The notes under the pieces were generated by a model. It saw only the letters and a program-made list of their open reading frames with translations, searched no databases and was not told the DNA's origin. Shown in pieces: positions 3,820 to 44,958 of a stretch of 64,000 bases of DNA. Numbering within the stretch: the stretch's first letter is position 1; every line of letters starts with the position of its first letter. Made by a program: the position numbers and the translations under genes. The DNA is taken from positions 1 to 64,000 of the IMG/VR virus record IMGVR_UViG_3300042895_001344; one strand, written 5' to 3'.

Positions 3820-3847
3820 AATATAATGAAAATATGTGAAAAATCAA
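3820..3847 (-). promoter_or_regulatory. Sigma70-like promoter TTGATT-N16-TATATT
   Basis: Lies 7 nt upstream of the ATG at 3812; the same architecture recurs at 6 other gene starts. Confidence 0.55.
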
Positions 3848-4656
3848 ATCAAATTTTGTTTATTTTTTGGTAAATAATTTATATAACTTGGGAAATTTTT
3901 TGATATAAAATCATGTAGTTTATTTGCATAGGTCTTATTATGGTTAGGCCCTGGATGTCCATTATCCACACCTAAATCTAAATATTTCCCATAATCACCA
4001 TCAAATCTGTTGAGTTCATTATGATCTATCGATGTTATTTCTCTAACATTCCAACCATTCCATACCCAATTACAATTTTTAGATTCTAAAAAATATTTTA
4101 TTAATAAATGATTTTTATACCAATTTACGGTATCCTCATTATAATTTTGTAAATAAGTTAAATATTCTTGTGTTTTAATACCATCATCAGTTTCTTTTAA
4201 ATAACCCCAAGAAGCCGTTGGCATGAACGGTTCAATACCACAATCTTTAGTATATATTTCTCTTCTTAAAGGTGAAGGATACATTATAAATATTAAATCA
4301 GGTTTTATTACATCATAATACGTTAATAAACATCTAACAATGAAATCATTACTTCTACCGCCAGCACCAAAATTAAAATTAACACCATTTGGTATCAATG
4401 ATGTGAATTGAGCTGGCCAAGTTTCATGATCATTAACCGCAACACCTTCGGTATTTGAACATCCAAATGACATAATTTTAAACCCTTCTCTTTTAATACT
4501 ATCACCTCTAAATCCTAATTCATTATATGTGTATGTACATAAACCTGTGTTGTCTGTACCTGATGTTTTAAATATTTTGTTTTTTCGTTCACCTAATTTA
4601 AACTTGTACGATGAGATTTCAAATTCATTAGGGTCCCAATATTTTAGTGGATTCAT
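3844..4656 (-). CDS. SGNH-like hydrolase/acyltransferase
   Basis: FGCSNTEG, GRSN and C-terminal DNGHPG match SGNH blocks I, II/III and V. Confidence 0.6.
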   Translation of the reverse strand: MNPLKYWDPNEFEISSYKFKLGERKNKIFKTSGTDNTGLCTYTYNELGFRGDSIKREGFKIMSFGCSNTEGVAVNDHETWPAQFTSLIPNGVNFNFGAGGRSNDFIVRCLLTYYDVIKPDLIFIMYPSPLRREIYTKDCGIEPFMPTASWGYLKETDDGIKTQEYLTYLQNYNEDTVNWYKNHLLIKYFLESKNCNWVWNGWNVREITSIDHNELNRFDGDYGKYLDLGVDNGHPGPNHNKTYANKLHDFISKNFPSYINYLPKNKQNLI

Positions 4657-5153
4657 ATTAATTTATTTGTTTCTATTTTTATATGTTCGTTTTCTAAAAA
4701 CCATAATAAAGAATATCGTACACCTTCTAAAATTGGTGTTATTTCATGGTCTATTCTTACATCAAATAAATATGTATTCCCAATAACTTTATCTAATGTA
4801 ATTTCATTTGGGTTATACAATTTAAAGTCACCTCCTTCAAAATCACCATTTAATAAAACTCCCACTGCATATAATCTATTATTTCTAATATCATTATGTT
4901 TTCCAAACCAATCACCTTTTACAAATTTATGAAAATGTATAACTTCTTTATTTTTTTTTATCCGTATGTTTGATTGTTCTTCAAAAAATGTTTTAAGTTT
5001 ATCAAACAACCATTTCGTTTCCAACGAATATGTAATTGATTGTGAATTATATTTTCTATCACTCATTATCCAATTTTTAATATGGGTGTCGTTATACGAT
5101 ATTATAGATTCACACTCCTCTTTATTAAATAAGACTTGTTCCTTTATTAACAT
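4653..5153 (-). CDS. 2OG-Fe(II) oxygenase (P4H/PKHD-like)
   Basis: HxD in WFGKHND, FEGGDF, distal H in HEITP, and RYSL. Confidence 0.8.
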   Translation of the reverse strand: MLIKEQVLFNKEECESIISYNDTHIKNWIMSDRKYNSQSITYSLETKWLFDKLKTFFEEQSNIRIKKNKEVIHFHKFVKGDWFGKHNDIRNNRLYAVGVLLNGDFEGGDFKLYNPNEITLDKVIGNTYLFDVRIDHEITPILEGVRYSLLWFLENEHIKIETNKLI

Positions 5154-5685
5154 TTATTCTATATTTTTCTCCGTAAGGAAAATTTTTATTTTCTAATTCA
5201 ACCATATTTAAATAATCTAATATTTTTTGAAAACCATTATTGTAATATAGTTCTTCATATGATATATTAAAATAATCTTTATTTAAATAATTTTCTTTTA
5301 ATCCGTTTTTGATTTGATTAAAATATGATACATCTCCGTCTTTTATTAAATTTTCTTTAAATACCCATGCTTTATCCCAATTATTTGTTTTATTAGCATT
5401 TAACCAAGATTCACTTTGTTCACTTATATTTTCTCTATATAAAATAATTACCTTATCTGATATTTCTATTAATTCTGAAAAATCTGTTTTAATATCATAT
5501 GTTTCTTTAATTAAAATGTGTGGTGTTTTATATTCCCACAATTTTGGTGATACACCATGTTTATACCACTTCCAATTTGGACTTGTTATGGGTTCAAATA
5601 ATGTGGTAAAATTTTTATTACTAAAAAACCAATTAGTTAAGTTGGTTGATCCACTTCGTGGTTCTGCTAGTATTGTTATAACCAT
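5125..5685 (-). CDS. Sulfotransferase-like protein (Stf0/P-loop type)
   Basis: 5'-PSB-like EPRSGSTNL followed by FEP; LYREN; YEEL. Confidence 0.65.
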   Translation of the reverse strand: MVITILAEPRSGSTNLTNWFFSNKNFTTLFEPITSPNWKWYKHGVSPKLWEYKTPHILIKETYDIKTDFSELIEISDKVIILYRENISEQSESWLNANKTNNWDKAWVFKENLIKDGDVSYFNQIKNGLKENYLNKDYFNISYEELYYNNGFQKILDYLNMVELENKNFPYGEKYRINVNKGTSLI

Positions 5686-5771
5686 TATTAAAAAATTGAT
5701 GTTGTTAAAGCTCTCATATTAATTTATTTTATAATTTTAATTATATGTTAAAAATTTATTACATAATAAAA

Positions 5772-6353
5772 TTATAATAATGTATTTTTTTCTTTTACAT
5801 TAGAAACATTAAATTTAAAATTACCAGCAATTACAATTCTATCTTTAGTTGAATTTGGGGAAATTTCAGGTTTGTGAAGTATTTTTGACGAAAATAAAAA
5901 TAATTCGTCTTCTTCAGGTAAAACTGAAAATTCATTTTTATCAAAACTATATGAGAACATACCTTCATTACCATTTAAATTATTTGGCATTTGTACATAA
6001 TAAGTGAAGGTTAAATCAGTTATAATGGAATTTTTATATTTTCCTCCCATTTTTAAATGGTCATGCCATAAAGATTGTTTTGTTTCATTTCTTGATATAA
6101 AAACCCAAGTCTCTAAACAATAATCTATAACCGTATCAATTATACCATTCTTTTTGAGATAATCAATTGCCTTTTTAGTTGCTATTTCTTTTATGAAAGT
6201 GATTTCCTTTGTGACCAATCCTAATGGAGTTTGTATACCAGGAGAATCATAATCACCTGTTTGGGATGAATATAAATTAATATTTTTTTTAAGTTGACTA
6301 ATTAATATTTGTTTATCGTATGGATAATCTATTTTATATTTTTCTATTTTCAT
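5772..6353 (-). CDS. Putative 2OG-Fe(II) oxygenase
   Basis: WHDH, LTFTYYV, LHKP, RIVIAGN. Confidence 0.65.
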   Translation of the reverse strand: MKIEKYKIDYPYDKQILISQLKKNINLYSSQTGDYDSPGIQTPLGLVTKEITFIKEIATKKAIDYLKKNGIIDTVIDYCLETWVFISRNETKQSLWHDHLKMGGKYKNSIITDLTFTYYVQMPNNLNGNEGMFSYSFDKNEFSVLPEEDELFLFSSKILHKPEISPNSTKDRIVIAGNFKFNVSNVKEKNTLL

Positions 6354-6976
6354 ATTATACTTTTATTATTTTTAAAATCTACAATTGGTTCATCTATATT
6401 TAAAAGTTTATGTAGTTTAACATAAAAATCATGGCACCCTTTCCAACCTGGATGCCAATCTATTGGGTCACCTCCTTCATCTGCAATAGAAGTTACTTTT
6501 ATTAATTCTATAAACTCTTTTGTTTTTTCATAAAACTCATCGTTCCATGTTACAAATATTGGTTGGTGGTGGTTATAAAACATTTTTATTTTCTTAAGAA
6601 ATAAAATTTCATCGTCTCGTTCACCATTTAACCAACTATTTGTTTCTTTAATTCGTAATTCAAACAGTTTTTTTGCAAATAATTTATCCTTATACCATTC
6701 CCAATTTAAATATTTTGAATTATGATTTATTTCTCTTTCCCCAAAATATCTTCTTGGGAATCTTGATGGGGATGTAAAAACTATTATGATTCTATCACCA
6801 TTTGTATAATTTGGTATATTTCCTGTTTGGTATAATATAGAGTGATTATCAGCTCCAAATTTTCCAAATTTAATTACGTTATAATGATTGGATAGATAGT
6901 CCGTCCAATGCATTTTAGGTACTTCCCAATCAACAAAACTATCACCACAAATATATAAATTAGATTTTTGTTTCAT
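6350..6976 (-). CDS. SGNH-like protein
   Basis: CGDSF, GADN, DWHPG. Confidence 0.6.
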   Translation of the reverse strand: MKQKSNLYICGDSFVDWEVPKMHWTDYLSNHYNVIKFGKFGADNHSILYQTGNIPNYTNGDRIIIVFTSPSRFPRRYFGEREINHNSKYLNWEWYKDKLFAKKLFELRIKETNSWLNGERDDEILFLKKIKMFYNHHQPIFVTWNDEFYEKTKEFIELIKVTSIADEGGDPIDWHPGWKGCHDFYVKLHKLLNIDEPIVDFKNNKSII

Positions 6977-7659
6977 TACACTAATCTCATATTTTTGGTG
7001 AAGGGCTTTTCAAAAACATCCCAAACCCATTTTTTTAATTCATCATTAACTTCAATTTTATTTTTTATTTTTGATGTTCCATTCATTTTTTTAATTTTTA
7101 ATACTACACCAAATTTTTCATATATTAAATTTTTGAATTTATCTATTTCGGAAATATCAAATTCATAATCACATTTTGTGTTATCTGTCCAATAATTCTT
7201 ACATGCAAATATCGATAACGTATCGGGTAAGTTTTTATTTATTACATTAAAAAATTTACTATATTCTTTTTGTATTTTATATTCATTATCACAATATATT
7301 GCATCTGCTAAATTTTTATTAAAATATTCATAAATAAAGTTATTATCAATATCCGACCAATTATATTTTAATTCGTTTCTATGAAGATGATTTGATATTT
7401 CAAAAAAATATTCCAATGCACTATACCATCTGTCAAACCAATTTCTTGTGATACAACAAGTTTTTTGAAAACCAAATTCTTCTAATAAGAAGTTTTTTCT
7501 AAAATGAAAATGGTGGTTTGTATTTATATTGGGGTAGGGTTCTTTAGATGTTAGATTTATTTGTAATTGATTATTATTTTTTAATGAATCTTCTATTGAG
7601 ACAGACGCACATCTTGGAATTGAAACCCAAATAAGTTGATTGTTAATAAGAATTGACAT
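6976..7659 (-). CDS. Sulfotransferase family 2-like protein
   Basis: WVSIPRCAS (IPK/RxAS PAPS loop) and TRNWFDRWYS (3'-PB motif RxPxxRxxS). Confidence 0.65.
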   Translation of the reverse strand: MSILINNQLIWVSIPRCASVSIEDSLKNNNQLQINLTSKEPYPNINTNHHFHFRKNFLLEEFGFQKTCCITRNWFDRWYSALEYFFEISNHLHRNELKYNWSDIDNNFIYEYFNKNLADAIYCDNEYKIQKEYSKFFNVINKNLPDTLSIFACKNYWTDNTKCDYEFDISEIDKFKNLIYEKFGVVLKIKKMNGTSKIKNKIEVNDELKKWVWDVFEKPFTKNMRLV

Positions 7660-7943
7660 TAAATAATTTTTTCATTATTTAATTTTTTTGCAAAAAACAA
7701 CTTGTCAACTTCTTCCCATTTTCCAATCGGGCATGGATTGTTATTTTTAGAATAAATTTTTTTCATTAATGGACATCCACATAAATCACAAACTATACCT
7801 AATTTAAATTTTTTTATACGTTCTTTTTTGTGTTCACAAGAATTACAAATTTCTGAACGTTTTTGTGCAAGGGACGCTTCTGCGTCAGATGGGTTTGCTG
7901 CTGTTATCCATGCGGATACTATTTCTAATAAATCTAAACTCAT
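7659..7943 (-). CDS. Small Cys-rich putative metal-binding protein (DUF6171-like)
   Basis: Pattern R-x2-IC-x2-C...C-x2-CGC...CP-x2-KW. Confidence 0.55.
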   Translation of the reverse strand: MSLDLLEIVSAWITAANPSDAEASLAQKRSEICNSCEHKKERIKKFKLGIVCDLCGCPLMKKIYSKNNNPCPIGKWEEVDKLFFAKKLNNEKII

Positions 7944-7949
7944 TGATTA

Positions 7950-7977
7950 AATATAACTAATTAAACGATAGGTGTAA
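7950..7977 (-). promoter_or_regulatory. Sigma70-like promoter TTACAC-N16-TATATT
   Basis: Lies 6 nt upstream of the ATG at 7943. Confidence 0.4.
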
Positions 7978-7981
7978 TTTT

Positions 7982-8068
7982 TTAAGAATTTTCGTTAATA
8001 ATTAATGCACCGATTTGGGTCATTAAATTATTCATTTCTAATATTTCTTGTTCTGTTATTGTATTCAT
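7982..8068 (-). CDS. Putative 28-aa peptide MNTITEQEILEMNNLMTQIGALIINENS (not in the ORF track)
   Basis: ATG-to-TAA ORF fills the gap directly downstream of the ATP-grasp/Hint gene, on the same strand. Confidence 0.45.
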   Translation of the reverse strand: MNTITEQEILEMNNLMTQIGALIINENS

Positions 8069-8089
8069 AATATAAATTTTAATAGTTTT

Positions 8090-9625
8090 TTAGAGTTGTA
8101 GACATCTATTTGAATAATATCCACAAGCACCTGTTGCCGAACAAACTTCATACATCTTATCACATCCACCAGACCCTACTCCAATTGAATTACATGGTGC
8201 ACAATATGAATTGTGTTCTACTGCGATATATGATGATACGGTTGCAGAATCACCATCTGTTATGGTTAGGAAAATATGTTCGTCTTGTACACCTATTATA
8301 TATCCACTTAATACTTCGGTTTCGTCTTGTATAGATATCACAGTTTTTTCATTAAATGAAATAGTATCATAATTACCAACATTTATTAATAATAATATAT
8401 CCCCTATTTGTAAATTTGATGTAGTTTGTGTGTTTATATCTTCCCCAATTGTTGCCCACATAACATTGTTATTTCTTTTTATTAAATAAACAGAATTTGA
8501 TGTATCTTTCCAATTTGTTTCGTCACTAAAGTTTAGTGTTGTTAATTTAACTGAAACATCAATTCTTTTTTTAAATGTTATTACATTGGTACTAAATGAT
8601 GAATTTGAAAGAAGTTCATTATAATCAACGTTATATGTCCTCAATTCGTTGGCCTCAGTTATGTTAGGTTGATTTTCATATAGTCTAATTGTTTTAACAG
8701 TATCACCAACCTGTAAATCTTGCCCTGTTTTAAAACTACCATCTGCCATTACAACTAAATCCGTATCAAGTAATTTAGGTTTCACCAACCTTTGTGTCCC
8801 TGTTAAGTATCCGTTTCTATCTACATTAGAAATTTGATGTGTTAGACTATCATATGAGTTGTCATTTAATTCTTGCATAACCTTTAAATTACCATATTTT
8901 TTGTATGCACAGATAGGAATCGATTCTAATGTTGGTGGGTATAAGATATTTAAGGAACGAATAATTGTAATACGTCCTTCGTTTAATTTTTCCTCATTAA
9001 ACAAATATTCCATTAAGAAATAATCTTCATTTACATTATTTGTAATAACTTCATTTAATTCTTCAATATTTGAAACTTTAAAAAATTTTGGGTATACTTC
9101 CCTATCATATATTGGAAATCTTGCTTTTAAAATAAAGTTTGGGTGTATACCATTATTAGGTATGGTCGTTATATTTGATATAACTTGTGAAGTTTCATCC
9201 ATATATGCAAACTTAAACCCAAAATTTTCATTCTGAAACAGTTTTAAAAAATTTACTTTATCTTTGCAGTAAGTTTCGTCAACGATTGCTGAAACATCGT
9301 AGGCACTTCTTACAATTAAGTGATTATCACTATCTTCAATATATGGAATTGTAATACCCCCTAAAGTTTCAATAAATTCATATTCTACCCCCAAATTAAC
9401 ACAAGCCTCATTAAATTTTTCACTTACTTGTGGAATTCCACCGATAAATGTGACCTTTACAAAATTGTTGTTTGATACAAAGCTTATAAATTGTGTCAAA
9501 TTTATGGCCCCCTCAGTCTCAGCCGCTAATCTCACATCCCAACCAATATTGGTGTTTATCTCAATTGGTCTTAAATCACCATTTGAATTGTATGCAAAAT
9601 CTGTCCCTAATAGCAATGTTCTCAT
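8090..9625 (-). CDS. Circularly permuted ATP-grasp-like domain + Hint domain + C-terminal Cys-rich peptide
   Basis: N-terminal TDF..G..RPIEINTN, FILKARFP and FLMEY. Hint-like LLDTDLVVMADGSFKTGQDLQVGDTV, GYIIGVQDEHIF and VEHN|S. Then a 39-aa tail with 6 Cys. Confidence 0.7.
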   Translation of the reverse strand: MRTLLLGTDFAYNSNGDLRPIEINTNIGWDVRLAAETEGAINLTQFISFVSNNNFVKVTFIGGIPQVSEKFNEACVNLGVEYEFIETLGGITIPYIEDSDNHLIVRSAYDVSAIVDETYCKDKVNFLKLFQNENFGFKFAYMDETSQVISNITTIPNNGIHPNFILKARFPIYDREVYPKFFKVSNIEELNEVITNNVNEDYFLMEYLFNEEKLNEGRITIIRSLNILYPPTLESIPICAYKKYGNLKVMQELNDNSYDSLTHQISNVDRNGYLTGTQRLVKPKLLDTDLVVMADGSFKTGQDLQVGDTVKTIRLYENQPNITEANELRTYNVDYNELLSNSSFSTNVITFKKRIDVSVKLTTLNFSDETNWKDTSNSVYLIKRNNNVMWATIGEDINTQTTSNLQIGDILLLINVGNYDTISFNEKTVISIQDETEVLSGYIIGVQDEHIFLTITDGDSATVSSYIAVEHNSYCAPCNSIGVGSGGCDKMYEVCSATGACGYYSNRCLQL

Positions 9626-9675
9626 ATGTTTTGTTTATACTTTTTTATAAATGATATATCGATTATTTTTATTTA

Positions 9676-9704
9676 AATATACAAATAATTATTCAATTTA
9701 TCAA
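9676..9704 (-). promoter_or_regulatory. Sigma70-like promoter TTGATA-N17-TATATT
   Basis: Upstream of the gene starting at 9625. Confidence 0.55.
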
Positions 9705-9721
9705 ATCTATTTTACTTTATC

Positions 9722-9732
9722 TATAAATAGTT
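9722..9732 (-). promoter_or_regulatory. AACTATTTATA motif (putative phage late promoter class)
   Basis: The same motif precedes the structural genes at 56880, 59283 and 62982. Confidence 0.45.
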
Positions 9733-9951
9733 AATTTTTCTCTTTTAGTTCATATTTTATTCATTTATACCAAATTATCTCATATATATAGTATTAAGTG
9801 GGGTTTACATACTAATTTCACAACCTTTTTTTGGGGGGGTCTCAATCTTAATAGATCCACTTTATCCACCATATTGTTAAGAATTAGGTTAAAATACTTA
9901 TAAGACGATATAAAATAGTTTTGAATATATGTCTATTTTTTATACCGTCAT
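9731..9951 (-). pseudogene. Decayed copy of the DUF2061 gene at 11666-11893
   Basis: Colinear nucleotide similarity. Remnant frames RHIFKTILYRLISILT*FLTIWW, SGSIKI and YYIYEIIWYK*IKY carry stops and frameshifts. Same ATGA overlap with an upstream oxygenase. Confidence 0.8.
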
Positions 9952-10427
9952 AATAATCTTTTATTCTTTGTGATCCAAATGGCCATAATTTCTCTACAAC
10001 CCGATGTTATTTCTTTAACCTCATGTTGTTCGGTTTGACCATTAAAGTTAACTAAATCTCCCTTTTTAAAATTTACCAATTCATTATTAACATATAATTC
10101 ACCTCCTTCAAAACTATCGTTTAACATAATCAAATACGTTTTACTTGACTTTACATCTATATGATTTCTAGCATAATAACCTGTCTCATATTTAATATAA
10201 TGTAATGAATATATAACCTCATCTTCCTCCAATTTTATATATTTTATTATAGTACTAACTAATATTTGATTACTTAAATCACAATAAAATATTTCTTTTA
10301 AATGAACTATTTTCTCAAAAGACTTACCATGATATGATATTACATCATTATTTTGATTACCAAAATTATAATATTTTAATATTATATCAATATCGTCTTG
10401 ACTTATATAATTTTTAAAAATATTCAT
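9948..10427 (-). CDS. 2OG-Fe(II) oxygenase
   Basis: NHID, FEGGEL, HEVKE, RE. Confidence 0.8.
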   Translation of the reverse strand: MNIFKNYISQDDIDIILKYYNFGNQNNDVISYHGKSFEKIVHLKEIFYCDLSNQILVSTIIKYIKLEEDEVIYSLHYIKYETGYYARNHIDVKSSKTYLIMLNDSFEGGELYVNNELVNFKKGDLVNFNGQTEQHEVKEITSGCREIMAIWITKNKRLL

Positions 10428-10430
10428 TTA

Positions 10431-10991
10431 TTAAATTAAATTTAATTTTTGAATTATTTGACTTTTTTCAATTGGCATCACAATAGACCATCTTTCCCCA
10501 TTTGTAATTTCTTTTATTTCGTGCCATATTCTACAATGATATCCCAACGCCGTACCAGGTTCTTTATTTATTATAATCTCGTTACCGGAATCATCCCACG
10601 TAATGTATTCACCACCATCATAGTCATCATTCAATTGTATCCCTAAATTATATCTTCTTTCTTCGTATCCTTTAATTAAATCTATATGCTTTGTAAAATG
10701 GTCGCCAATTGTATATCTATGCAAAGTACATATAAGTGTTTTAAAAGTTTTGTCAATTTTAACTTCACTAACTTCACTAAACCAATTAATTAATTTATCA
10801 TAAAACCAATTGGTTTCATTATTATTTAATATGGTGTACACTTCATATGACATTAAATTTTGATTACTTTTTATTCTCTGTCCATCGATAAGTTTTGACG
10901 GAAACCAACCTTCTAATTCTGTATATTTTTTGTGGTATTGTATTATAGTTTGACATTCCTCTTTTGTAAATATTTTTTCTTGGTAAATCAT
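10431..10991 (-). CDS. 2OG-Fe(II) oxygenase (P4H/PKHD-like)
   Basis: FTKHID, YDGGEY, WHEIKE, RWSIV. Confidence 0.8.
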   Translation of the reverse strand: MIYQEKIFTKEECQTIIQYHKKYTELEGWFPSKLIDGQRIKSNQNLMSYEVYTILNNNETNWFYDKLINWFSEVSEVKIDKTFKTLICTLHRYTIGDHFTKHIDLIKGYEERRYNLGIQLNDDYDGGEYITWDDSGNEIIINKEPGTALGYHCRIWHEIKEITNGERWSIVMPIEKSQIIQKLNLI

Positions 10992-11009
10992 ACATACTAC
11001 TTTAATTTA

Positions 11010-11038
11010 AATATACAATAATTTTTTGTAATTACCAA
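11010..11038 (-). promoter_or_regulatory. Sigma70-like promoter TTGGTA-N17-TATATT
   Basis: Upstream of the ATG at 10991. Confidence 0.5.
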
Positions 11039-11598
11039 TTCTTTCCATTATAATGTGGTTCTATCATTAGTTTAAGCCACTTCTCCTCTTCACTAATCAA
11101 TTTTTCTAATTGAATAGAGTGTTCGTGTGGTAAGGTACTTAATGCCGTTTCTATGGAATTGTATTTAGTTGGTAGTTTAAATTCATATTGGGTCGGTGAC
11201 CATTGTAATTTGGAATCAGTTGGAGTAAGTTGAGACAGATCTCGAAGTTTATAAAATGAAAATCCTAACTTTTTATGTAATGGATAAAGTTTTTTATATA
11301 GATACGGATACCAATGTACGGAACCACCTTCTATCATATTGGTTACAATATCAATTACGTCCAATTGAGGTTTGAATGATAAATCAGTTACTGTACCAGA
11401 TAGAAAATGTTCCATTATAGGTCTATATATAAAAGTAGTACCACTATGTATATGTTTCTCTAAATCAGTTATGTCAAATCCAAAAGTATCTATACGATTT
11501 TTCACATCTAACCCCTCTAACCAACGGGTACCACATTTTAAAGGTGCGATTATATCTAATCCGTTTTTATATATACAACGTTTAAGTCTAATTTTCAT
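11032..11598 (-). CDS. Divergent sulfotransferase-like protein
   Basis: APLKCGTRWL resembles the PKxGTxxL loop; FIYRPIMEHFLS resembles the 3'-PB motif. Confidence 0.4.
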   Translation of the reverse strand: MKIRLKRCIYKNGLDIIAPLKCGTRWLEGLDVKNRIDTFGFDITDLEKHIHSGTTFIYRPIMEHFLSGTVTDLSFKPQLDVIDIVTNMIEGGSVHWYPYLYKKLYPLHKKLGFSFYKLRDLSQLTPTDSKLQWSPTQYEFKLPTKYNSIETALSTLPHEHSIQLEKLISEEEKWLKLMIEPHYNGKNW

Positions 11599-11665
11599 TA
11601 TAGGTTAGTTACAGTATAATACTTTTATTTGTAATTCCCCCCACCATTTCTTTATACCATTATAA

Positions 11666-11893
11666 CTATGTTTTGGATTTTTTGAAATCTTTTAATCCAA
11701 ATTTTATCCATTTATACCAAATTCTTTCGTGAATATAGTATTGGATGGGTTTATATATTAATTCTACTACCCCAAAAGCCGTTCCAATCTTAATTGATCC
11801 ACTTACCCACCATATTATTAAGAACCCAATAAGGGTACTTATAATACGATATGATATGGTTTTAGCGATGTGTCTCTTCCTTTCTACTATCAT
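11666..11893 (-). CDS. DUF2061 small membrane protein
   Basis: RHIAKTISYRIIST...YYIHERIW; this family is often linked to sulfate-activation genes. Confidence 0.75.
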   Translation of the reverse strand: MIVERKRHIAKTISYRIISTLIGFLIIWWVSGSIKIGTAFGVVELIYKPIQYYIHERIWYKWIKFGLKDFKKSKT

Positions 11894-12441
11894 AATAATG
11901 TTTTAGATTTTTTGGAATTGTTTTTATCAATAACTTTCCAATCAATTAATAAATGAATTCTATCAGTTTCTCCATTATTGATAACCGAATGTGGTTTATC
12001 ACTATTATTTATTTCCCAAATCTCACCTTGTTTCATATTAATCTCTTCACCATCAACTTCAAATATGCACATATCGTTGGTTACAATTGGAATGTGTATT
12101 CTGTTTCTAGAATCAAAATATATATGTGCATCGGTATGTGGTTTTATTTTTTTAGATTTTGGTAAATTTATTAGAATTGCAGTTTCAATATGACCTTCTC
12201 CTATTTTTGTTGTTAAAATATCACCGATACTATCCAAATCATTTTTAAAAATATTATAATCTTTCCAATATTTTAATTGTGTTTTTTCGTTATCCCATAA
12301 AATCGGAATTGTAAATGTTTCCGCGTGGACATGATACGATTCTTGTCTAAATGTAAATTCATTCCAATCTAAATCTTTTAGATGATTTGATATATTGCTA
12401 ACATCATATCTTTCGTAATATTTAAAATTAAAATCTATCAT
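11890..12441 (-). CDS. Aspartyl/asparaginyl beta-hydroxylase-like 2OG oxygenase
   Basis: IKPHTD, RIHIPI, HSVIN.G..RIHL. Confidence 0.8.
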   Translation of the reverse strand: MIDFNFKYYERYDVSNISNHLKDLDWNEFTFRQESYHVHAETFTIPILWDNEKTQLKYWKDYNIFKNDLDSIGDILTTKIGEGHIETAILINLPKSKKIKPHTDAHIYFDSRNRIHIPIVTNDMCIFEVDGEEINMKQGEIWEINNSDKPHSVINNGETDRIHLLIDWKVIDKNNSKKSKTLL

Positions 12442-12824
12442 TTATCATTCATATTAGGATATTCGATAATATCTCCGTTAGAGTCAATATACCCGTTTCT
12501 GATACTTGTACCACTAATTTTAGCAACATCTTCAGGTGGTTCGTGGTAAATAACATCATACCCAACCCCTCTACCATAATTGATACTTTCAATATCGGGA
12601 ATAATAGATATATTAATTTTATGTGAATTTTCCTTAAAAAACGGTTCGTCCGCCAAATCCATCATAACCTGTTGAGCGGTTTTTGGGTTATTCTCATCTG
12701 TCTCCACATTTCTAATGGCTACCCACACATTCTTTCCTTTCTCTAATTGTTGATTAAGTAACCACTCGTGACCCTTGTGCCAATTCTGCCATCTGCCCAC
12801 ATACATCGCATATTTTTTATTCAT
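12438..12824 (-). CDS. Small HxGH nucleotidyltransferase (cytidylyltransferase-like fold); possible minimal ATP sulfurylase
   Basis: GRWQNWHKGH, YGRGVG, ISGTSIR; translationally coupled to cysC. Confidence 0.7.
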   Translation of the reverse strand: MNKKYAMYVGRWQNWHKGHEWLLNQQLEKGKNVWVAIRNVETDENNPKTAQQVMMDLADEPFFKENSHKINISIIPDIESINYGRGVGYDVIYHEPPEDVAKISGTSIRNGYIDSNGDIIEYPNMNDK

Positions 12825-13258
12825 AGTGTTAATTTTTTTAATATTTCATAATAAGAATCTACTTCGGTTTTACCTGTTGTATCCAAATCTATAAAGTTTT
12901 CGGTCGGTGGTTCGTAGTTCTCCACATGAAACTGATTTCTACCTCTATCCTCTGTCGTGTGTACATAAACCTCAATAACGTCTTCTCTATTCTTAAAGTC
13001 CTCCCTTTGGTCTTTATATGGTGAAACTAAGGATACCAAGACCGTAAACCCCTTTTTATTCAAAAATTGAGCAATGTCTTGTGCTCTTTCAATATTTTTT
13101 CTCCTTCCCACCTCAGAATAGTCCTTATTTTGGAAGATATCCCTCAAATCGTCACCATCTATAATAATAGTGTTCTCCTTACCAAAATGGGTTAGGAGGT
13201 TGTTTACTAACGTAGTCTTACCTGATGCGGGTTGTCCGGTGAACCAATATATTGACAT
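12821..13258 (-). CDS. cysC: Adenylyl-sulfate (APS) kinase
   Basis: WFTGQPASGKTT P-loop, DGDDLR, VSLVSPY, YEPP. Confidence 0.85.
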   Translation of the reverse strand: MSIYWFTGQPASGKTTLVNNLLTHFGKENTIIIDGDDLRDIFQNKDYSEVGRRKNIERAQDIAQFLNKKGFTVLVSLVSPYKDQREDFKNREDVIEVYVHTTEDRGRNQFHVENYEPPTENFIDLDTTGKTEVDSYYEILKKLTL

Positions 13259-13266
13259 AATACTAT

Positions 13267-13295
13267 AATATAAAGAAAGTTTTTTAAAAAACCAA
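13267..13295 (-). promoter_or_regulatory. Sigma70-like promoter TTGGTT-N17-TATATT
   Basis: Lies 8 nt upstream of the cysC ATG. Confidence 0.55.
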
Positions 13296-13296
13296 A

Positions 13297-13413
13297 TTAA
13301 TGGTTATAGATAAATGGATCTCTTTTACGTAATTCTTCTAATTTCTTTTTAAATTCCTTCTTTCTCTTTTTGTCGGCAAAGTATTTCTTTACCCAATTGA
13401 TTAGTTTTTTCAT
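13297..13413 (-). CDS. 38-aa basic peptide MKKLINWVKKYFADKKRKKEFKKKLEELRKRDPFIYNH (not in the ORF track)
   Basis: Clean ORF starting 3 nt after the carbamoyltransferase stop. From recall (not searched), a KKLEELRKRDPFIY-type ending occurs in small phage ORFs. Confidence 0.65.
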   Translation of the reverse strand: MKKLINWVKKYFADKKRKKEFKKKLEELRKRDPFIYNH

Positions 13414-13416
13414 ATT

Positions 13417-15084
13417 TTAATTTTTATACATAACATAATTACCCATTACTAATATATCCATATCAGTATCAAAGAAAGTATCGACAGCATCTTTTGGCGT
13501 TAATACCATTGTTTTATCTTTAACATTGAATGAGGTATTCAGTAAAATTGGATAACCACTTAATTTTTCAAATTCCCTTAATAAATCATGAATTACGGTG
13601 TATTTGTAAACTGTTTGAACTCTTGCACTACCATCTACGTGTGTAACCGCCAGTAGTTTATCACGATATTCTTCCTTTACTTTAACAACTTGATTCATAT
13701 ATGGAACATCGTCTGTCATCTCAAAGAATTGATCTTGTTTCTCTTTGGTTACCATTGGGGCAAATGGTCTAAAACCTTCTCTTTTCTTAATCACCTTATT
13801 AATTCTATCTTTCATATTAGGTAATGTTGGATTTGCTAATATTGATCTATTACCTAACGCCCTTGATCCAAATTCTATATGACCATTAAACCATCCAACA
13901 ACTTTACCTTCAAATAATTTTTGTGCAATATGTGTTCTTAATTTATTTTCAGATTCAAACTTTTTAAAGTTCTTGGTACCAATTGCATGTCTAATATCAT
14001 CTAAATAATATTCGGGACCTAAAAATGGATTTCTTGTAATTTTACTTCTTACTTTACGTTCTTTAACCAAATAATGAACCACAGCACCTATTGCCGACCC
14101 TGCGTCAGATGGTGCAGGTGGAATCCAAAGGTGTGTAAAATGTGATTTGTCTATAATCTTGCCATTCGCCGTTCCATTATATGCACATCCACCACTTAAT
14201 GTTAAGTTTGAACTTTTACTTACGTGTCTAATTGATTTGATAATTTCAAATAATACCTCTTCGTATCTTAATTGAACCGCTGCCGCCAAATCTTTGTGTG
14301 TTTGTTCCAATGTTTCTTCCGGTAATCTTTGTGGGACGCTTAATAGTTCCGCAAGTTTTTCGTTGAACATGGATTTATCGGTCTTATTCCAACAAAATAC
14401 ATCCATATTACACACCAACTTACCACTTTTAAATGAAATCAAATCACGTACCTCTTTAATATACTTTTGAGGGTCACCATAGGACGCCAATCCCATTACC
14501 TTATACTCACCTTCGTTCGGTCTAAACCCTAAATAAGAGGTTAATGCGGAGTAATAAAGACCCATTGAATGTGGATACTTTGCAACTGAACTGTACTTAA
14601 TTCCATTGTAATCGGCAACCCCTAACGACACCGTATCAATTTCACCTACACCGTCAACGGATAAACAAGTAGATTCCTCAAAATGAGACGTATAATGTGC
14701 ATAATACTGATGAGCCTCGTGATGTGTTGAATAAAATACCGTGGGACAAATCTCTTTTAATTTCTTATCAATTTCTTTTATGTTATTACGTATTTTCAAA
14801 TACGACTTTAACGAATATATGGGATTCTTAAACCATTGAGGTTTGATGTTTTTCATTACTCTTTGATACTTTAATTGGGGATCTTCGTAATAACAAACCG
14901 CCTGTAAGTTCTTAGGTGTAATCTTATATTGTTTATAGATATATTCCAACGCTTTGGTTGGAAACGAATCATCATGTTTAATACCTGTGAATTTTTCTTC
15001 CTCGCAAGCAAATATTAATTGGTTATCTCTGAATAAACAAACAGAGGAGTCATGATAAAATGCTGAAATTCCTATAATATACAT
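13417..15084 (-). CDS. O-carbamoyltransferase, NodU/CmcH family
   Basis: HDSS, HHEAH, GEYKVMGLASYG, GGCAYN, EFGSRALGNRSILA, FRPFAP, HVDGSARVQTV, LNTSFN. Confidence 0.92.
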   Translation of the reverse strand: MYIIGISAFYHDSSVCLFRDNQLIFACEEEKFTGIKHDDSFPTKALEYIYKQYKITPKNLQAVCYYEDPQLKYQRVMKNIKPQWFKNPIYSLKSYLKIRNNIKEIDKKLKEICPTVFYSTHHEAHQYYAHYTSHFEESTCLSVDGVGEIDTVSLGVADYNGIKYSSVAKYPHSMGLYYSALTSYLGFRPNEGEYKVMGLASYGDPQKYIKEVRDLISFKSGKLVCNMDVFCWNKTDKSMFNEKLAELLSVPQRLPEETLEQTHKDLAAAVQLRYEEVLFEIIKSIRHVSKSSNLTLSGGCAYNGTANGKIIDKSHFTHLWIPPAPSDAGSAIGAVVHYLVKERKVRSKITRNPFLGPEYYLDDIRHAIGTKNFKKFESENKLRTHIAQKLFEGKVVGWFNGHIEFGSRALGNRSILANPTLPNMKDRINKVIKKREGFRPFAPMVTKEKQDQFFEMTDDVPYMNQVVKVKEEYRDKLLAVTHVDGSARVQTVYKYTVIHDLLREFEKLSGYPILLNTSFNVKDKTMVLTPKDAVDTFFDTDMDILVMGNYVMYKN

Positions 15085-22321: not shown

Positions 22322-22364
22322 AATATTATATAATAATATAAATAAAAAAAATCGTAATAACAAT

Positions 22365-30030: not shown

Positions 30031-30576
30031 ATGAGTTCACCAGAATATACCCCATATAAGGACGCACTAACAAATTCAATGACTTACCTTGGTCAACAGG
30101 AAGATACTGTATTTATAGGTCAACAGGTTCTTTGGCACGGTAATCCAATGAGTACGACCATTGGTGATGTTCCTAAAGAAAAACTAATTGAACTTCCCGT
30201 TATGGAAGAATCTCAAATGGGTATGTCATTAGGAATGGCTATGGCTGGTAAGTTTGTCGTTACATTCTACCCTCGTTGGGATTTTGTAATATGTTCAACA
30301 AATCAATTAGTTAACCATGTTGATAAAATTGGATTAATGAGTCAAGGTAAATGGCAACCTAATATGATTATTCGTTTAGGTAAGGGTTCTGATAAACCGT
30401 TAGATCCAGGTCATCAACACAGAGGTAATTACTTTGAGGAATTCAAATCCATGTGTCCTAATATTAATTTTATTGATTTAAAGGATTGGAACGATATTGA
30501 ATTACATTATAAAAACGCATACGAAAAAGGTGGTATTCATGTAATTGTGGAATATCCTGAATTATATTATATTTAA
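30031..30576 (+). CDS. TPP-dependent enzyme, E1-beta/transketolase pyrimidine-binding domain only
   Basis: ELPVMEESQMGMSLGMA, PGHQH; 181 aa with no C-terminal domain. Confidence 0.8.
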   Translation: MSSPEYTPYKDALTNSMTYLGQQEDTVFIGQQVLWHGNPMSTTIGDVPKEKLIELPVMEESQMGMSLGMAMAGKFVVTFYPRWDFVICSTNQLVNHVDKIGLMSQGKWQPNMIIRLGKGSDKPLDPGHQHRGNYFEEFKSMCPNINFIDLKDWNDIELHYKNAYEKGGIHVIVEYPELYYI

Positions 30577-44009: not shown

Positions 44010-44022
44010 AATTATTTATTAT

Positions 44023-44220: not shown

Positions 44221-44226
44221 ATAATA

Positions 44227-44946: not shown

Positions 44947-44958
44947 AATTTTTTATTT

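What the first reader, a model, noticed from the sequence alone, without database searches (positions are those of the whole stretch)
3844..12441. Unrelated enzymes share a basic-then-dihydrophobic C-terminal tag (..K/N-x-x-[LI][LIV]-COOH)
Seen: 10 of the 12 ORFs of 90 aa or more in this span end KQNLI, TNKLI, GTSLI, KNTLL, NKSII, NMRLV, NEKII, NKRLL, KLNLI and SKTLL. The same ending recurs at 19784 (ENLI), 30562 (KLNII), 32062 (QNKLI) and 33027 (IKNLI). These are SGNH, 2OG oxygenase, sulfotransferase, Cys-rich, radical SAM and GT-like folds with no common ancestry. The structural genes end differently (RFGL, GGTF). Stop/start overlap does not explain all cases: 3844 and 5772 are followed by gaps and 30562 is convergent. 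Inference: a shared C-terminal docking or degron signal, for example recruitment to a scaffold or compartment, or turnover by a C-terminal-recognising protease.
Basis: partly seen in the sequence, partly recalled or inferred. Interest (0 to 1): 0.75.

Follow-up and report, generated by a model that had tools for sequence, protein, structure and literature searches.

The report
Shared C-terminal tag on phage enzymes
In a large group of uncultured giant freshwater phages, the enzymes of one gene island, although unrelated in fold, all end in the same short tail (lysine-rich linker, then Leu/Ile-Ile/Leu at the very end), which behaves like an address label read by a common, still unidentified partner.

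Summary
In 3844-12441, 10 of 13 genes end [LI][LIV]-COOH against a 5% internal rate (p 2e-11).

- **Spread:** the same island of 5-17 tagged genes recurs in about 120 related IMG/VR contigs. 28 protein families carry the tail in 60-100% of members and 55 neighbouring families in 0-25%.
- **Protein-level selection:** the hydrophobic pair sits exactly at -2/-1 in 90% of 543 representatives. Synonymous codon use matches internal use. Tail frequency does not depend on what lies downstream.
- **Form:** it is an appended 7-15-residue flexible module, and AF2 gives pLDDT under 50 for it.
- **Context:** 47 of 49 complete islands are anchored by one untagged gene (window 8090-9625). It is an ATP-grasp domain fused to a Hint domain that lacks the position-1 nucleophile, followed by invariant His-Asn and a hypervariable Cys-rich peptide.

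Best reading (about 0.4): the tail docks tailoring enzymes onto this RiPP-like, probably self-cleaving precursor. My one docking prediction did not place the tail. Main rival (about 0.25): a degron, since the phage encodes ClpP and a ClpC-like unfoldase without an N-domain. Composition, stop/start coupling and a DNA motif are rejected. I found no description of it in the literature.

The parts
3844..4656 (-).
   Evidence: The ortholog in L002 ends SKLI at 63% identity. 66-73% of the family is tagged. No Pfam or PHROG hit.
4653..5153 (-). Tagged 2OG-Fe(II) oxygenase (family 0, 166 aa), ends TNKLI
   Evidence: phrog_61. 111 of 126 full-length representatives in the 1.84e9-protein library end in two hydrophobic residues.
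5125..5685 (-). Tagged sulfotransferase-like protein (family 5, 186 aa), ends GTSLI
   Evidence: Atlas neighbours carry Sulfotransfer_3/1. 96-98% of the family is tagged.
5772..6353 (-). Tagged 2OG-Fe(II) oxygenase (family 6, 193 aa), ends KNTLL
   Evidence: phrog_81. The L002 ortholog ends KTIL.
6350..6976 (-).
   Evidence: Weak BLAST similarity to family 10.
6976..7659 (-). Tagged sulfotransferase-like protein (family 4, 227 aa), ends NMRLV
   Evidence: Atlas neighbours carry Sulfotransfer_2. In alignment A4 the -2 Leu is one of about 17 invariant or near-invariant columns at 20-55% identity. AF2 gives pLDDT 91 overall, a last helix at 206-220, and pLDDT under 50 for residues 224-227.
7659..7943 (-). 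Tagged small Cys-rich protein with CxxC motifs (family 8, 94 aa), ends NEKII
   Evidence: 80-93% of the family is tagged.
8090..9625 (-). Untagged anchor gene of the island (511 aa). Residues 1-275 are an ATP-grasp domain, 280-472 a Hint/BIL domain, followed by invariant H471-N472 and a disordered, hypervariable Cys-rich peptide of 39 aa.
   Evidence: AF2 pLDDT 81. Foldseek and VIA-align matches. Conservation. C-peptide variability. Present in 47 of 49 complete islands. It is the only common untagged family inside islands.
9948..10427 (-). Tagged 2OG-Fe(II) oxygenase (159 aa), ends NKRLL
   Evidence: PF13640 at 9.5e-9. The L002 ortholog ends KNII.
10431..10991 (-). Tagged 2OG-Fe(II) oxygenase (186 aa), ends KLNLI
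   Evidence: PF13640 at 5e-10. The L002 ortholog ends MHLI.
11032..11598 (-). Untagged island gene in this phage (188 aa, ends NGKNW). Two of the three family members elsewhere are tagged.
11666..11893 (-). Untagged small membrane protein, DUF2061 (75 aa)
   Evidence: PF09834 at 4e-15. The family is never tagged.
11890..12441 (-). Tagged Asp/Asn beta-hydroxylase-family protein (183 aa), ends SKTLL
   Evidence: PF05118. Among homologs the tail is an appended module: an extension of 5 aa or less gives 0 of 10 tails, and 7 aa or more gives 56 of 59. The syntenic ortholog in L245 lacks it.
19784..22363 (-). Outlying tagged protein (859 aa), ends FENLI. Its paralog 18507-19784 ends FENLCK.
30562..31731 (-). 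Outlying tagged radical SAM protein (389 aa), ends KLNII, convergent with the next gene
   Evidence: PF04055 below cut-off. Family 3 is 92-98% tagged.
32062..33027 (-). Outlying tagged protein (321 aa), ends QNKLI
   Evidence: Only a faint GDSL hit.
33027..34313 (-). Outlying tagged protein (428 aa), ends IKNLI
12438..15084 (-). Untagged neighbours that plausibly supply precursors: cytidylyltransferase-like, APS kinase-like and carbamoyltransferase-like genes
   Evidence: Families 9, 17 and 7 are tagged in 0%, 0% and 11-24% of members.

Best explanation
The tail is a protein-level short linear motif. It is a 7-15-residue flexible extension with a Lys/Asn-rich, hydrophobic-poor linker (K/N at -4, T/S/K/N at -3) that ends in [L/I][I/L] with a free carboxylate. 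It marks the tailoring enzymes of one phage gene island and is read at the very C-terminus by one conserved partner. I hold this general claim at about 0.85.

The specific mechanism I think most likely (about 0.4) is docking.

The anchor looks like a RiPP-like precursor. It has a large ATP-grasp-Hint 'leader' carrying a hypervariable Cys-rich C-terminal core peptide. The Hint domain's invariant His-Asn could release that peptide by Asn cyclisation. The enzymes would then act on the tethered peptide. This inverts the usual RiPP logic, in which the enzymes carry a domain that reads the leader.

Shown: the motif, its conservation, its exposure, its positional precision, its restriction to the island, and the domain make-up of the anchor.
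For: **The motif is real and selected at the protein level**
- 10 of 13 genes against a 5% internal rate, p 2e-11.
- Islands of 5-17 tagged genes in about 120 contigs.
- Families are bimodal: 28 are tagged and 55 are not.
- The logo, and synonymous codon use at -2 equal to internal use.
- A hydrophobic pair at -2/-1 in 90% of representatives, against 3.7% and 1.3% one and two positions inward and 8.7% internally.
- Tail frequency of 88%, 83% and 89% with an overlapping, a gapped or a convergent downstream gene.
- The -2 Leu is near-invariant at 20-55% identity.
- 111 of 126 distant 2OG representatives are tagged.
- The tail is an appended module on a linker of variable length.
- The tail is disordered in the AF2 model.

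**The link to the anchor gene**
- It lies within three genes of 47 of 49 complete islands, although the loci were fetched with other genes as queries.
- It is the only common untagged family inside islands.
- In L245 it is followed directly by 12 consecutive tagged genes, while the upstream sugar, APS-kinase and carbamoyltransferase genes are untagged.
- Its ATP-grasp domain resembles glutathione synthetase and glutathionylspermidine-synthase/YjfC-type enzymes. By established knowledge, those enzymes bind and activate a peptide's C-terminal carboxylate.

**The RiPP-like reading**
- The C-peptide has 6-8 Cys and a conserved C-x-K, and is hypervariable: 38% identical where residues 1-472 are 70-80% identical.
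- His-Asn is present in 120 of 120 homologs.
- The tagged set consists of typical natural-product tailoring enzymes, including a halogenase.
Against: - The only docking test did not place the tail. Anchor protein plus ATP, Mg and the last 16 residues of 11890 scored ipSAE 0.48 against a best control of 0.05, which the tool rates as 'weak support'. One of the three runs scored 0.00. The confident contacts were peptide residues 168-173 (WKVIDK, the exposed end of the last beta-strand), not the KTLL end.
- Some anchor proteins end ...VHNK with no Cys-rich peptide, or carry 2-4 extra canonical Hint domains instead. Their islands are still fully tagged. The Cys-rich peptide therefore cannot be the universal substrate.
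- The tail consensus does not co-vary with the anchor subtype.
- Four tagged genes in the window lie 10-25 kb from the anchor.
- Co-occurrence could reflect a shared pathway rather than physical contact.
Confidence: 0.4

Rival explanations
1. The tail is a C-terminal degron. The basic linker plus a non-polar end with a free carboxylate would be gripped by an AAA+ unfoldase. That could be the phage's own ClpC-like ATPase working with phage ClpP, or host ClpXP, ClpAP or FtsH. The island's enzymes would then be short-lived or cleared at a set time in infection.
For: - The phage encodes a true ClpP (PF00574, 1e-55; G000 84022-84699).
- It also encodes a 677-695-aa double-AAA ClpC-like protein with AAA, AAA_lid_9, UVR, AAA_2 and ClpB_D2-small domains and a GVGF loop of the ClpP-docking type, but no Clp_N domain.
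- ClpP or the ClpC-like gene occurs in all seven related records that are at least 53% complete and were checked, and each of them also carries the anchor gene.
- By established knowledge, non-polar C-termini are destabilising in bacteria (ssrA ...LAA). ClpX also reads a basic-then-hydrophobic C-terminal class typified by MuA ...RRKKAI.
- The requirement for an exact free C-terminus fits a reader that engages the carboxylate.
Against: - The Clp genes are core genes of the whole clade (553 or more contigs at 77-100% identity), so co-occurrence carries no information.
- They are not linked to the island.
- Four island-bearing fragments that are 43-67% complete show no ClpP.
- A degron does not explain why only the tailoring enzymes next to the anchor gene are tagged, while the precursor-supply enzymes and the paralogs in the neighbouring cluster (15809-18510) are not.
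Confidence: 0.25
2. The tail is a weak membrane-association signal. Basic residues plus two terminal hydrophobic residues would keep the tailoring enzymes at the inner face of the cytoplasmic membrane, near a lipid-linked substrate or the small DUF2061 membrane protein encoded in the island.
For: - The linker is Lys-rich and the end is hydrophobic.
- A DUF2061 membrane protein lies in or beside many islands.
- The neighbouring genes are of glycan-building type: GT4-FkbM methyltransferase, APS kinase, carbamoyltransferase and sugar epimerases.
- By established knowledge, LpxO-type Asp/Asn hydroxylase homologs act at the membrane.
Against: - Two hydrophobic residues are too few for a known bacterial membrane-targeting sequence, which is normally an amphipathic helix of 8-12 residues.
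- Membrane binding would not need the pair exactly at the free end, yet one position inward is strongly depleted.
- DUF2061 is found inside islands only once among 31 sequences.
Confidence: 0.1
3. The tail is a substrate end for covalent chemistry by the anchor protein. The ATP-grasp domain would activate the -Leu-Ile carboxylate and join it to an amine. Alternatively, a linker lysine would attack the succinimide made by the Hint His-Asn. Either way, tagged proteins would become covalently modified or tethered.
For: - The ATP-grasp fold is nearest to ligases that act on peptide C-terminal carboxylates.
- D9, E22, N24, K167 and R223 are invariant.
- His-Asn is invariant.
- The anchor's C-peptide holds a conserved Lys, and the tails have K at -4 in 47% of cases.
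- Recognition requires the exact free C-terminus.
Against: - There is no direct evidence.
- The complex prediction did not put the tail end near the ATP site.
- Stoichiometric covalent capture of enzymes would be wasteful.
- No precedent is known for this chemistry with a Hint domain that lacks its position-1 nucleophile.
Confidence: 0.1
4. The pattern is not a protein signal. It would be an AT-rich compositional bias, a by-product of stop/start overlap (ATGA, TAATG), or a conserved DNA or RNA element at gene ends.
For: - The genome is 25-32% GC.
- Many island genes overlap by ATGA or TAATG.
- A-ending codons are somewhat enriched at -1, and TGA stops make up 30% against 15% elsewhere.
Against: - The internal rate of the dipeptide class is 5-9% against 77-90% at the end.
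- Tail frequency is the same whether the next gene overlaps (88%), lies more than 20 nt away (83%) or converges (89%). Untagged families with overlapping neighbours are tagged in 1% of cases.
- Codon choice at -2 equals internal use, and the -3 residue varies among T, S, K and N, so no DNA word is conserved.
- The rest of the same genome is at background.
Confidence: 0.02

Closest known systems
PTS1 peroxisomal targeting signal (-Ser-Lys-Leu-COOH, read by the TPR domain of Pex5)
   Same: It is a tripeptide-scale signal at the extreme free C-terminus, on a flexible and often basic linker. Many enzymes of unrelated fold carry it, one receptor reads it, and it is gained and lost family by family.
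   Different: The sequence class differs: here -2 is hydrophobic rather than basic. The host is a prokaryote with no known organelle, and no shell gene was found (TPR receptors were not searched for). The comparison is one of function only.
C-terminal degrons of bacterial AAA+ proteases (ssrA ...LAA; the ClpX C-motif-2 class typified by MuA ...RRKKAI)
   Same: Both have a free carboxylate, a non-polar end and preceding basic residues. The phage carries a ClpP and a ClpC-like unfoldase.
   Different: Known degrons end in small Ala-rich residues, not Leu-Ile. They mark regulators or stalled products, not a whole set of enzymes in one operon. No degradation data exist for this tail.
Encapsulin cargo-loading peptides and microcompartment encapsulation peptides
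   Same: They are short terminal extensions on flexible linkers that direct unrelated enzymes to one protein assembly.
   Different: Those peptides are longer (about 10-20 residues, with GSL-type motifs or amphipathic helices) and need a shell. No Linocin_M18 or BMC gene was found in G000 or in the complete relative G004.
PDZ ligands and tail-specific protease (Prc/Tsp) substrates
   Same: Recognition uses the last 3-4 residues with a hydrophobic final residue. About 43% of tails have S or T at the third-from-last position, as class I PDZ ligands do.
   Different: No PDZ_2 or Peptidase_S41 gene is present in the phage record. Bacterial PDZ proteases are periplasmic, and the tagged enzymes show no signal peptides on reading their N-termini.
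RiPP biosynthesis with protein-like or enzyme-fused precursors (NHLP/Nif11 leaders; borosin OphMA, where the enzyme is fused to its own core peptide)
   Same: There is a large folded N-terminal part, a short hypervariable Cys-rich C-terminal peptide, and a neighbouring set of radical SAM, hydroxylase, halogenase and sulfotransferase-like tailoring enzymes.
   Different: No RiPP precursor is known that is released by a Hint domain, and no case is known in which the enzymes carry a common tail in place of an RRE. Some anchor proteins have no core peptide at all.
Bacterial intein-like (BIL) and pre-toxin HINT domains
   Same: The anchor's residues 280-472 match the BIL2 domain at Z 15.2, with an invariant C-terminal His-Asn followed by a variable C-terminal module.
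   Different: Position 1 is Lys or Tyr, never Cys, Ser or Thr, so only C-terminal cleavage is plausible. Fusion to an ATP-grasp domain turned up in no paper found here.

Membership tests
Functional C-terminal short linear motif (generic) | Enriched over a composition-matched background | tested here: met
   10 of 13 against 5% (p 2e-11). 90% against an 8.7% internal rate in 543 representatives.
Functional C-terminal short linear motif (generic) | Conserved in orthologs while the flanking linker varies | tested here: met
   Ortholog pairs, alignment A4, the hydroxylase family with 7-15-aa linkers, and distant 2OG representatives.
Functional C-terminal short linear motif (generic) | Lies in an exposed, disordered region | tested here: met
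   AF2 model of 6976-7659: overall pLDDT 91, residues 224-227 under 50, following the last helix at 206-220. Only one protein was modelled.
Functional C-terminal short linear motif (generic) | An identified binding partner | tested here: inconclusive
   The complex prediction with the anchor protein gave ipSAE 0.48 against a best control of 0.05, but the contacts were not at the tail end.
ClpX/ClpA-type C-terminal degron | Non-polar last residues with a free carboxylate | tested here: met
   Logo and positional precision.
ClpX/ClpA-type C-terminal degron | Match to a known degron consensus (LAA, or RRKKAI-like with small final residues) | tested here: not met
   The ends are L/I-I/L. Ala is not among the seven commonest residues at -1 or -2, each of which is listed down to 1%.
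ClpX/ClpA-type C-terminal degron | Tail-dependent degradation by the protease | not testable with these tools
   Needs half-life or in-vitro degradation assays. Only the presence of ClpP and a ClpC-like gene was shown.
PDZ or tail-specific protease ligand | A PDZ- or S41-domain reader encoded by the phage | tested here: not met
   No PF13180 or PF03572 match in G000. Host proteins were not testable, and G000 is only 65% complete.
Encapsulin or microcompartment cargo tag | A shell protein encoded alongside | tested here: not met
   No PF04454 or PF00936 match in G000 or in the complete G004.
Translational-coupling or DNA-motif artefact | Dependence on an overlapping downstream start, or a conserved nucleotide word | tested here: not met
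Hint / bacterial intein-like domain (anchor gene 8090-9625) | Hint fold | tested here: met
   Foldseek E 1e-8 and VIA-align Z 15.2 to BIL2 6y75, with many inteins at Z 11-14.
Hint / bacterial intein-like domain (anchor gene 8090-9625) | C-terminal His-Asn for Asn cyclisation | tested here: met
   H471 and N472 are invariant in 39 of 39 and 120 of 120 sequences.
Hint / bacterial intein-like domain (anchor gene 8090-9625) | Cys, Ser or Thr nucleophile at position 1, as needed for splicing | tested here: not met
   The structural equivalent, residue 284, is K in 25 and Y in 14 of 39 sequences. It is therefore not a splicing intein, and at most a C-terminal cleaver.
ATP-grasp amidoligase (anchor gene, residues 1-275) | ATP-grasp fold with conserved acidic/Asn metal ligands and Lys/Arg | tested here: inconclusive
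   Foldseek probability 1.0 but E only 3e-5 to 4e-4 and TM 0.25-0.27 (whole-model normalised) to glutathione synthetases, YjfC and a GspS. D9, E22, N24, K167 and R223 are invariant. There is no Pfam or PDB sequence hit, and the roles of these residues are inferred.
RiPP precursor (anchor gene) | Hypervariable core peptide next to tailoring enzymes | tested here: met
RiPP precursor (anchor gene) | The core peptide is modified and released | not testable with these tools
   Needs expression and mass spectrometry. Variants without any core peptide exist.

The most novel reading that the evidence does not exclude
The island is a phage-borne peptide-maturation system of a new type. A self-processing ATP-grasp-Hint protein would carry a hypervariable Cys-rich peptide. 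Its conserved body would act as the hub that reads a universal -K-x-[TSKN]-[LI][IL]-COOH badge on every tailoring enzyme. This would be an inverted leader/RRE logic that lets any small enzyme join the pathway by gaining about ten residues. In the stronger version, the ATP-grasp domain activates that carboxylate and so tethers or modifies the enzymes covalently.
Probability: 0.3. Interest if true: 0.9.

Novelty: new variant of a known kind. Interest (0 to 1): 0.8.

Why it matters
C-terminal address labels shared by unrelated enzymes are known from eukaryotic organelles (PTS1, KDEL), from encapsulins and from protease degrons. I found no report of such a label that organises a whole phage gene island.

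Here the label is short, sharply defined, portable and conserved across hundreds of environmental phage sequences. Families gain and lose it, and paralogs outside the island lack it. That makes it directly testable with a handful of peptides and reporter fusions.

If it is a docking tag, it gives a simple rule for how hypervariable viral enzyme islands recruit new activities. It would also offer a possible 10-residue handle for enzyme scaffolding. If it is a degron for the phage's own Clp machine, it would be a clear case of a virus-encoded protease with virus-encoded, tag-defined substrates.

Either way, it draws attention to an undescribed ATP-grasp-Hint-peptide protein family that is abundant in freshwater viromes.

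Tried and rejected
- **Composition and chance.** Rejected.
- **Stop/start coupling or a DNA word.** Rejected by downstream-context and codon analysis.
- **Phage tmRNA whose tag might match.** None found, only five tRNAs.
- **Cultured relatives.** None were found for the region or for two of its proteins in the phage collection. The only hits were partial, about 33% identical 2OG matches in Xanthomonas, Stenotrophomonas and Erwinia phages.
- **Phage-encoded readers of PDZ, S41, encapsulin or BMC type.** None found.
- **Docking of the tail on the anchor protein.** My peptide included W168-V170-I171, the end of the last beta-strand. Those residues made the confident contacts, not the tail end, so the test is uninformative for the motif.
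- **Co-variation of tail consensus with anchor subtype.** None seen.
- **Link between catalytic-residue loss in the anchor and tail loss.** Only one degenerate locus was found (L118, 2 of 5 tagged), which is anecdotal.
- **Clp co-occurrence as a discriminator.** Uninformative, because the Clp genes are core genes of the clade.
- **Clamp-binding motif (QL[SD]LF, or T4 gp45-type aromatic tails).** Considered from memory and set aside, because Q and aromatic residues are not enriched.
- **Literature.** Searches for an ATP-grasp-Hint protein, Hint-domain RiPP precursors, phage-encoded Clp proteases and phage sulfotransferase/2OG islands, plus term searches in a jumbo-phage review, found no description.
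- **Sequence search of the anchor against PDB chains.** Nothing significant.

Full report

Yes. All genes between 3844 and 12441 lie on the minus strand. The four outliers are also correct: 19784 ENLI, 30562 KLNII, 32062 QNKLI and 33027 IKNLI.

The exceptions in the span are:
- 8090-9625, a 511-aa protein ending CLQL;
- 11032-11598, ending GKNW;
- a 75-aa DUF2061 membrane protein.

Inside these same proteins the [LIV][LIV] dipeptide occurs at 5.0% of positions, so ten of thirteen has a binomial p of 2.3e-11. The window belongs to a 217,142-bp IMG/VR virus record of 31.6% GC that CheckV rates 65% complete. It is a myovirus with tail sheath, large terminase and major head protein. Of 213 called genes, 21 end this way. 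Fourteen of those lie between 3.8 and 34.3 kb, and the rest of the genome is at the background rate of about 4%.

**2. Is it a feature of the DNA or of the protein?**

Of the protein.

A relative fetched with the 511-aa protein (L002, 54% identical) has 15 of 16 consecutive genes ending NLI, NII, NLV, SLL, TIL, ELI, TLI and so on. The codons differ from those of the window. Ortholog pairs at 44-73% identity keep the last two residues, while the preceding 5-10 residues vary and carry insertions and deletions.

Two further scans of IMG/VR brought the set to 129 loci. They used a 2OG oxygenase alignment and the alignment of the protein at 3844-4656 as queries. Almost every locus contains a run of 5-17 tagged genes.

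Clustering the 1,749 distinct proteins gave a bimodal picture. Of the families with four or more members, 28 carry the tail in at least 60% of members, most of them in 80-100%. Another 55 carry it in at most 25%, most of them in none.

The logo from 543 non-redundant members is:

| Position | Residues |
|---|---|
| -7 to -5 | K-rich |
| -4 | K 47%, N 20% |
| -3 | T 24%, K 20%, S 19%, N 14% |
| -2 | L 68%, I 18% |
| -1 | I 60%, L 26% |

Codon use for Leu and Ile at -2 equals internal codon use. At -1 there is only a mild excess of A-ending codons, as ATGA overlaps would produce.

Tail frequency in tagged families does not depend on the downstream context. Untagged families with an overlapping neighbour are tagged in 1% of cases.

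| Downstream context | Tagged |
|---|---|
| Next gene overlaps | 88% |
| Next gene more than 20 nt away | 83% |
| Next gene converges | 89% |

The hydrophobic pair is at exactly -2/-1 in 90% of members. It is at -3/-2 in 3.7% and at -4/-3 in 1.3%, which is below the internal rate of 8.7%. That precision points to a reader that engages the free carboxylate end.

**3. What kind of element is it?**

- **Conservation.** In the sulfotransferase-like family of 6976-7659, members are only 20-55% identical. The -2 Leu is nevertheless one of about 17 invariant or near-invariant columns, alongside conserved Pro, Ser, His and Arg positions that are presumably catalytic.
- **Exposure.** The AF2 model of that protein is confident (pLDDT 91). 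Its last helix ends at residue 220, and residues 224-227 fall below pLDDT 50.
- **Modularity.** In the Asp/Asn hydroxylase family of 11890-12441, homologs whose chain stops 1-5 residues after the last strand (HLLID[WYF]) never have the tail (0 of 10). Those with 7-15 extra residues nearly always do (56 of 59). Linker length varies.
- **Age and spread.** In a library of 1.84 billion representatives, 111 of 126 full-length homologs of the 2OG oxygenase 4653-5153 end in two hydrophobic residues, down to about 26-30% identity.

The tail is therefore an appended, exposed, portable module on a flexible linker, which is the anatomy of a short linear motif. Families gain and lose it. Four tandem paralogs at 15809-18510 lack it, although 82% of their family elsewhere has it. 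The syntenic hydroxylase ortholog in L245 also lacks it.

**4. What carries it, and what does not?**

Tagged in the window:
- four 2OG-Fe(II) oxygenases;
- an Asp/Asn beta-hydroxylase-family cupin;
- two different sulfotransferase-like families;
- a 94-aa Cys-rich protein;
- a radical SAM protein;
- three proteins of unknown fold.

A relative also has a tagged Trp-halogenase homolog.

Untagged are the genes that would supply activated precursors or build glycans:
- APS kinase;
- a cytidylyltransferase-like protein;
- carbamoyltransferase;
- sugar epimerases and an aminotransferase;
- the 911-aa GT4-FkbM methyltransferase.

The tail nonetheless spans at least five unrelated folds in the window.

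**5. The anchor gene**

One untagged family sits at the 5' edge of, or inside, the tagged run. This is the 511-aa protein at 8090-9625. It lies within three genes of 47 of 49 complete islands, even though most loci were fetched with other genes as queries. It is the only common untagged family found inside islands. In L245, which is syntenic with the window, twelve consecutive tagged genes follow it directly.

It has no Pfam or PHROG hit. The AF2 model (pLDDT 81) shows three parts.

- **Residues 1-275: an ATP-grasp domain.** Its nearest matches are eukaryotic glutathione synthetases, E. coli YjfC and a glutathionylspermidine synthase. By established knowledge these enzymes activate the C-terminal carboxylate of a peptide. 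D9, E22, N24, K167 and R223 are invariant.
- **Residues 280-472: a Hint/bacterial-intein-like domain.** VIA-align gives Z 15.2 to the BIL2 domain 6y75, and many inteins score Z 11-14. The residue that takes the place of the intein's Cys1 is Lys or Tyr in all 39 aligned members, so splicing is excluded. The C-terminal His-Asn is invariant in 120 of 120 homologs, so C-terminal cleavage by Asn cyclisation is plausible.
- **After His-Asn: a disordered peptide of 25-55 residues.** It has 6-8 Cys and a conserved C-x-K, and it is otherwise hypervariable. Where residues 1-472 are 70-80% identical, the peptide is 38% identical.

Some members instead end ...VHNK, or carry 2-4 further canonical Hint domains (CFxAGT...HN). 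Their islands are tagged all the same. More than 600 homologs exist in metagenomes, and all are unnamed.

**6. How does the tail most likely work?**

I hold the general claim at about 0.85: this is a protein-level signal read at the free C-terminus by one conserved partner. For the specific mechanism I favour docking on the anchor protein, at about 0.4.

Under that reading, the anchor looks like a RiPP-like precursor with a large folded 'leader' and a hypervariable Cys-rich core that its own Hint domain could release. The tagged proteins are the kinds of enzyme that tailor peptides: hydroxylases, radical SAM, halogenase and sulfotransferases. They are small single-domain proteins with no recognisable leader-binding domain. 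A common tail read by the conserved body of the precursor would give every enzyme access to the tethered peptide. It would also explain why an enzyme is tagged when it serves this island and untagged when it does not.

The evidence is contextual only. It scored ipSAE 0.48 (runs 0.61, 0.00 and 0.48) against a best control of 0.05, which the tool rates as 'weak support'. The confident contacts were peptide residues 168-173 (WKVIDK). That is the exposed end of the domain's last strand, not the KTLL end. I therefore count this as no support for the motif. Anchor variants without a Cys-rich peptide show that this peptide cannot be the only substrate.

**7. Rivals**

- **Degron, about 0.25.** The phage encodes a true ClpP (1e-55). 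It also encodes a ClpC-like double-AAA unfoldase with a GVGF ClpP-docking loop and no N-domain. Both are present in the related large genomes. Non-polar C-termini with a free carboxylate are the classic bacterial degron class. However, these Clp genes are core genes of the clade, so co-occurrence says nothing. They are unlinked to the island. Four island-bearing fragments lack ClpP. A degron also does not explain the sharp split between tagged and untagged genes within one pathway.
- **Membrane association, about 0.1.** This fits the basic-hydrophobic character and the nearby DUF2061 and glycan genes. It does not fit the need for an exact free end.
- **Covalent use of the tail by the ATP-grasp or Hint chemistry, about 0.1.** The anchor's folds make this conceivable, but nothing supports it directly.
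- **Composition, coupling or a DNA motif.** Refuted (section 2).

**8. Comparison with what is known**

In function, the closest analogue is PTS1 (-SKL-COOH): a tripeptide-scale C-terminal label on unrelated enzymes, read by one receptor. Others are encapsulin cargo-loading peptides, ssrA/MuA-type degrons and PDZ ligands.

None is a membership match:
- the sequence class differs from PTS1 and from known degrons;
- no shell, PDZ or S41 gene is present;
- degradation could not be tested.

The anchor protein meets the fold and His-Asn criteria of BIL/PT-HINT domains but fails the position-1 nucleophile test. Its ATP-grasp assignment rests on fold similarity alone. Literature searches, including a comparative survey of jumbo phages (PMC7824862, which mentions ClpP in some groups), found no description of the tail or of the ATP-grasp-Hint protein. 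No cultured phage carries the island. The only host hint is a 3.7-kb contig with a tagged 2OG gene, the anchor gene and a tagged Cys-rich gene, binned in a Candidatus Pelagibacterales MAG.

**9. Verdict**

The finding is a real, strongly selected, previously undescribed C-terminal tag that defines membership of a hypervariable phage enzyme island. Simple peptide-binding and reporter-stability experiments would decide between them.

Noticed in passing
window 8090-9625 (-): An undescribed protein family: ATP-grasp domain, then a Hint/BIL domain with Lys or Tyr in place of the position-1 nucleophile, invariant His-Asn, and a hypervariable 25-55-aa peptide with 6-8 Cys and a conserved C-x-K. More than 600 unnamed homologs exist in metagenomes. 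It looks like a self-cleaving, RiPP-like or toxin-like precursor.
   Followed up: yes
L063:13549-15903, L105:14-1864, G004 314056-316311: Variants of the same family replace the Cys-rich peptide with 2-4 tandem canonical Hint domains (CFxAGT...HN) and end ...VHNK. The invariant Cys at +3 after the first His-Asn corresponds to Cys1 of the next Hint domain. In L090 and L105 a conserved 50-aa ORF (MDxSKHPxLYKKK...) follows.
   Followed up: partly
G000 84022-84699 (-) and 193467-195554 (+), outside the window (L138, L139): The phage encodes its own ClpP (PF00574, 1e-55) and a ClpC-like double-AAA unfoldase with UVR motif and GVGF loop but no Clp_N domain. The unfoldase is a highly conserved core gene of the clade (77-100% identical in the 80 best of 553 matching IMG/VR stretches).
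   Followed up: partly
window 15809-18510 (-): Four tandem paralogs (207, 243, 250 and 201 aa) lack the tail (ending KKI, YIQ, LNK and NNE), although 82% of their family is tagged in other phages. A fifth paralog (G000 195541-196200, ends KKIM) overlaps the end of the ClpC-like gene.
   Followed up: partly
window 18507-19784 and 19784-22363 (-): Adjacent paralogs end FFENLCK and FFENLI. The first looks like a tail capped or altered by a small change, which makes it a natural 'masked tag' control.
   Followed up: no
window 5125-5153: 5125-5685 overlaps the annotated start of 4653-5153 by 29 nt, which is unusual beside the 1-4-nt overlaps elsewhere. The downstream gene may start at a later codon.
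   Followed up: no
window 11666-11893 (-): A DUF2061 two-helix membrane protein sits between the hydroxylase and the tagged block. In relatives it lies next to the APS kinase/cytidylyltransferase-like pair or a peptide deformylase, and it is never tagged.
   Followed up: partly
window 43296-48682 (-): Four paralogous genes (237, 255, 272 and 226 aa; family 146), two of them ending RFGL, lie just upstream of very large genes that end DGGTF and DLGGF (59371-62982, and 63081 onward, 1742 aa). They are probably baseplate or fibre modules, so the enzyme island lies beside the tail-fibre region.
   Followed up: no
G000 214836-216035, outside the window: A cluster of five tRNA genes (Thr-TGT, Asn-GTT, Met-CAT, Ser-TGA, Glu-TTC). 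There is no tmRNA.
   Followed up: no
L161 (VHCC01000082.1, 3.7 kb): A short contig binned in a Candidatus Pelagibacterales MAG from a lake sample carries a tagged 2OG gene, the anchor gene (645 aa, with an extra C-terminal domain) and a tagged Cys-rich gene. It is probably phage DNA co-binned with its host, which would hint at a freshwater SAR11 host.
   Followed up: partly
L244:7353-8567: A flavin-dependent Trp-halogenase homolog carrying the tail (FKNLI) sits in a related island, which adds to the natural-product character of the tagged enzyme set.
   Followed up: no
window 1077-3812 (-): A 911-aa fusion of a GT4 glycosyltransferase and an FkbM-type methyltransferase closes the island. It is untagged and conserved at the same position in L245.
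   Followed up: partly
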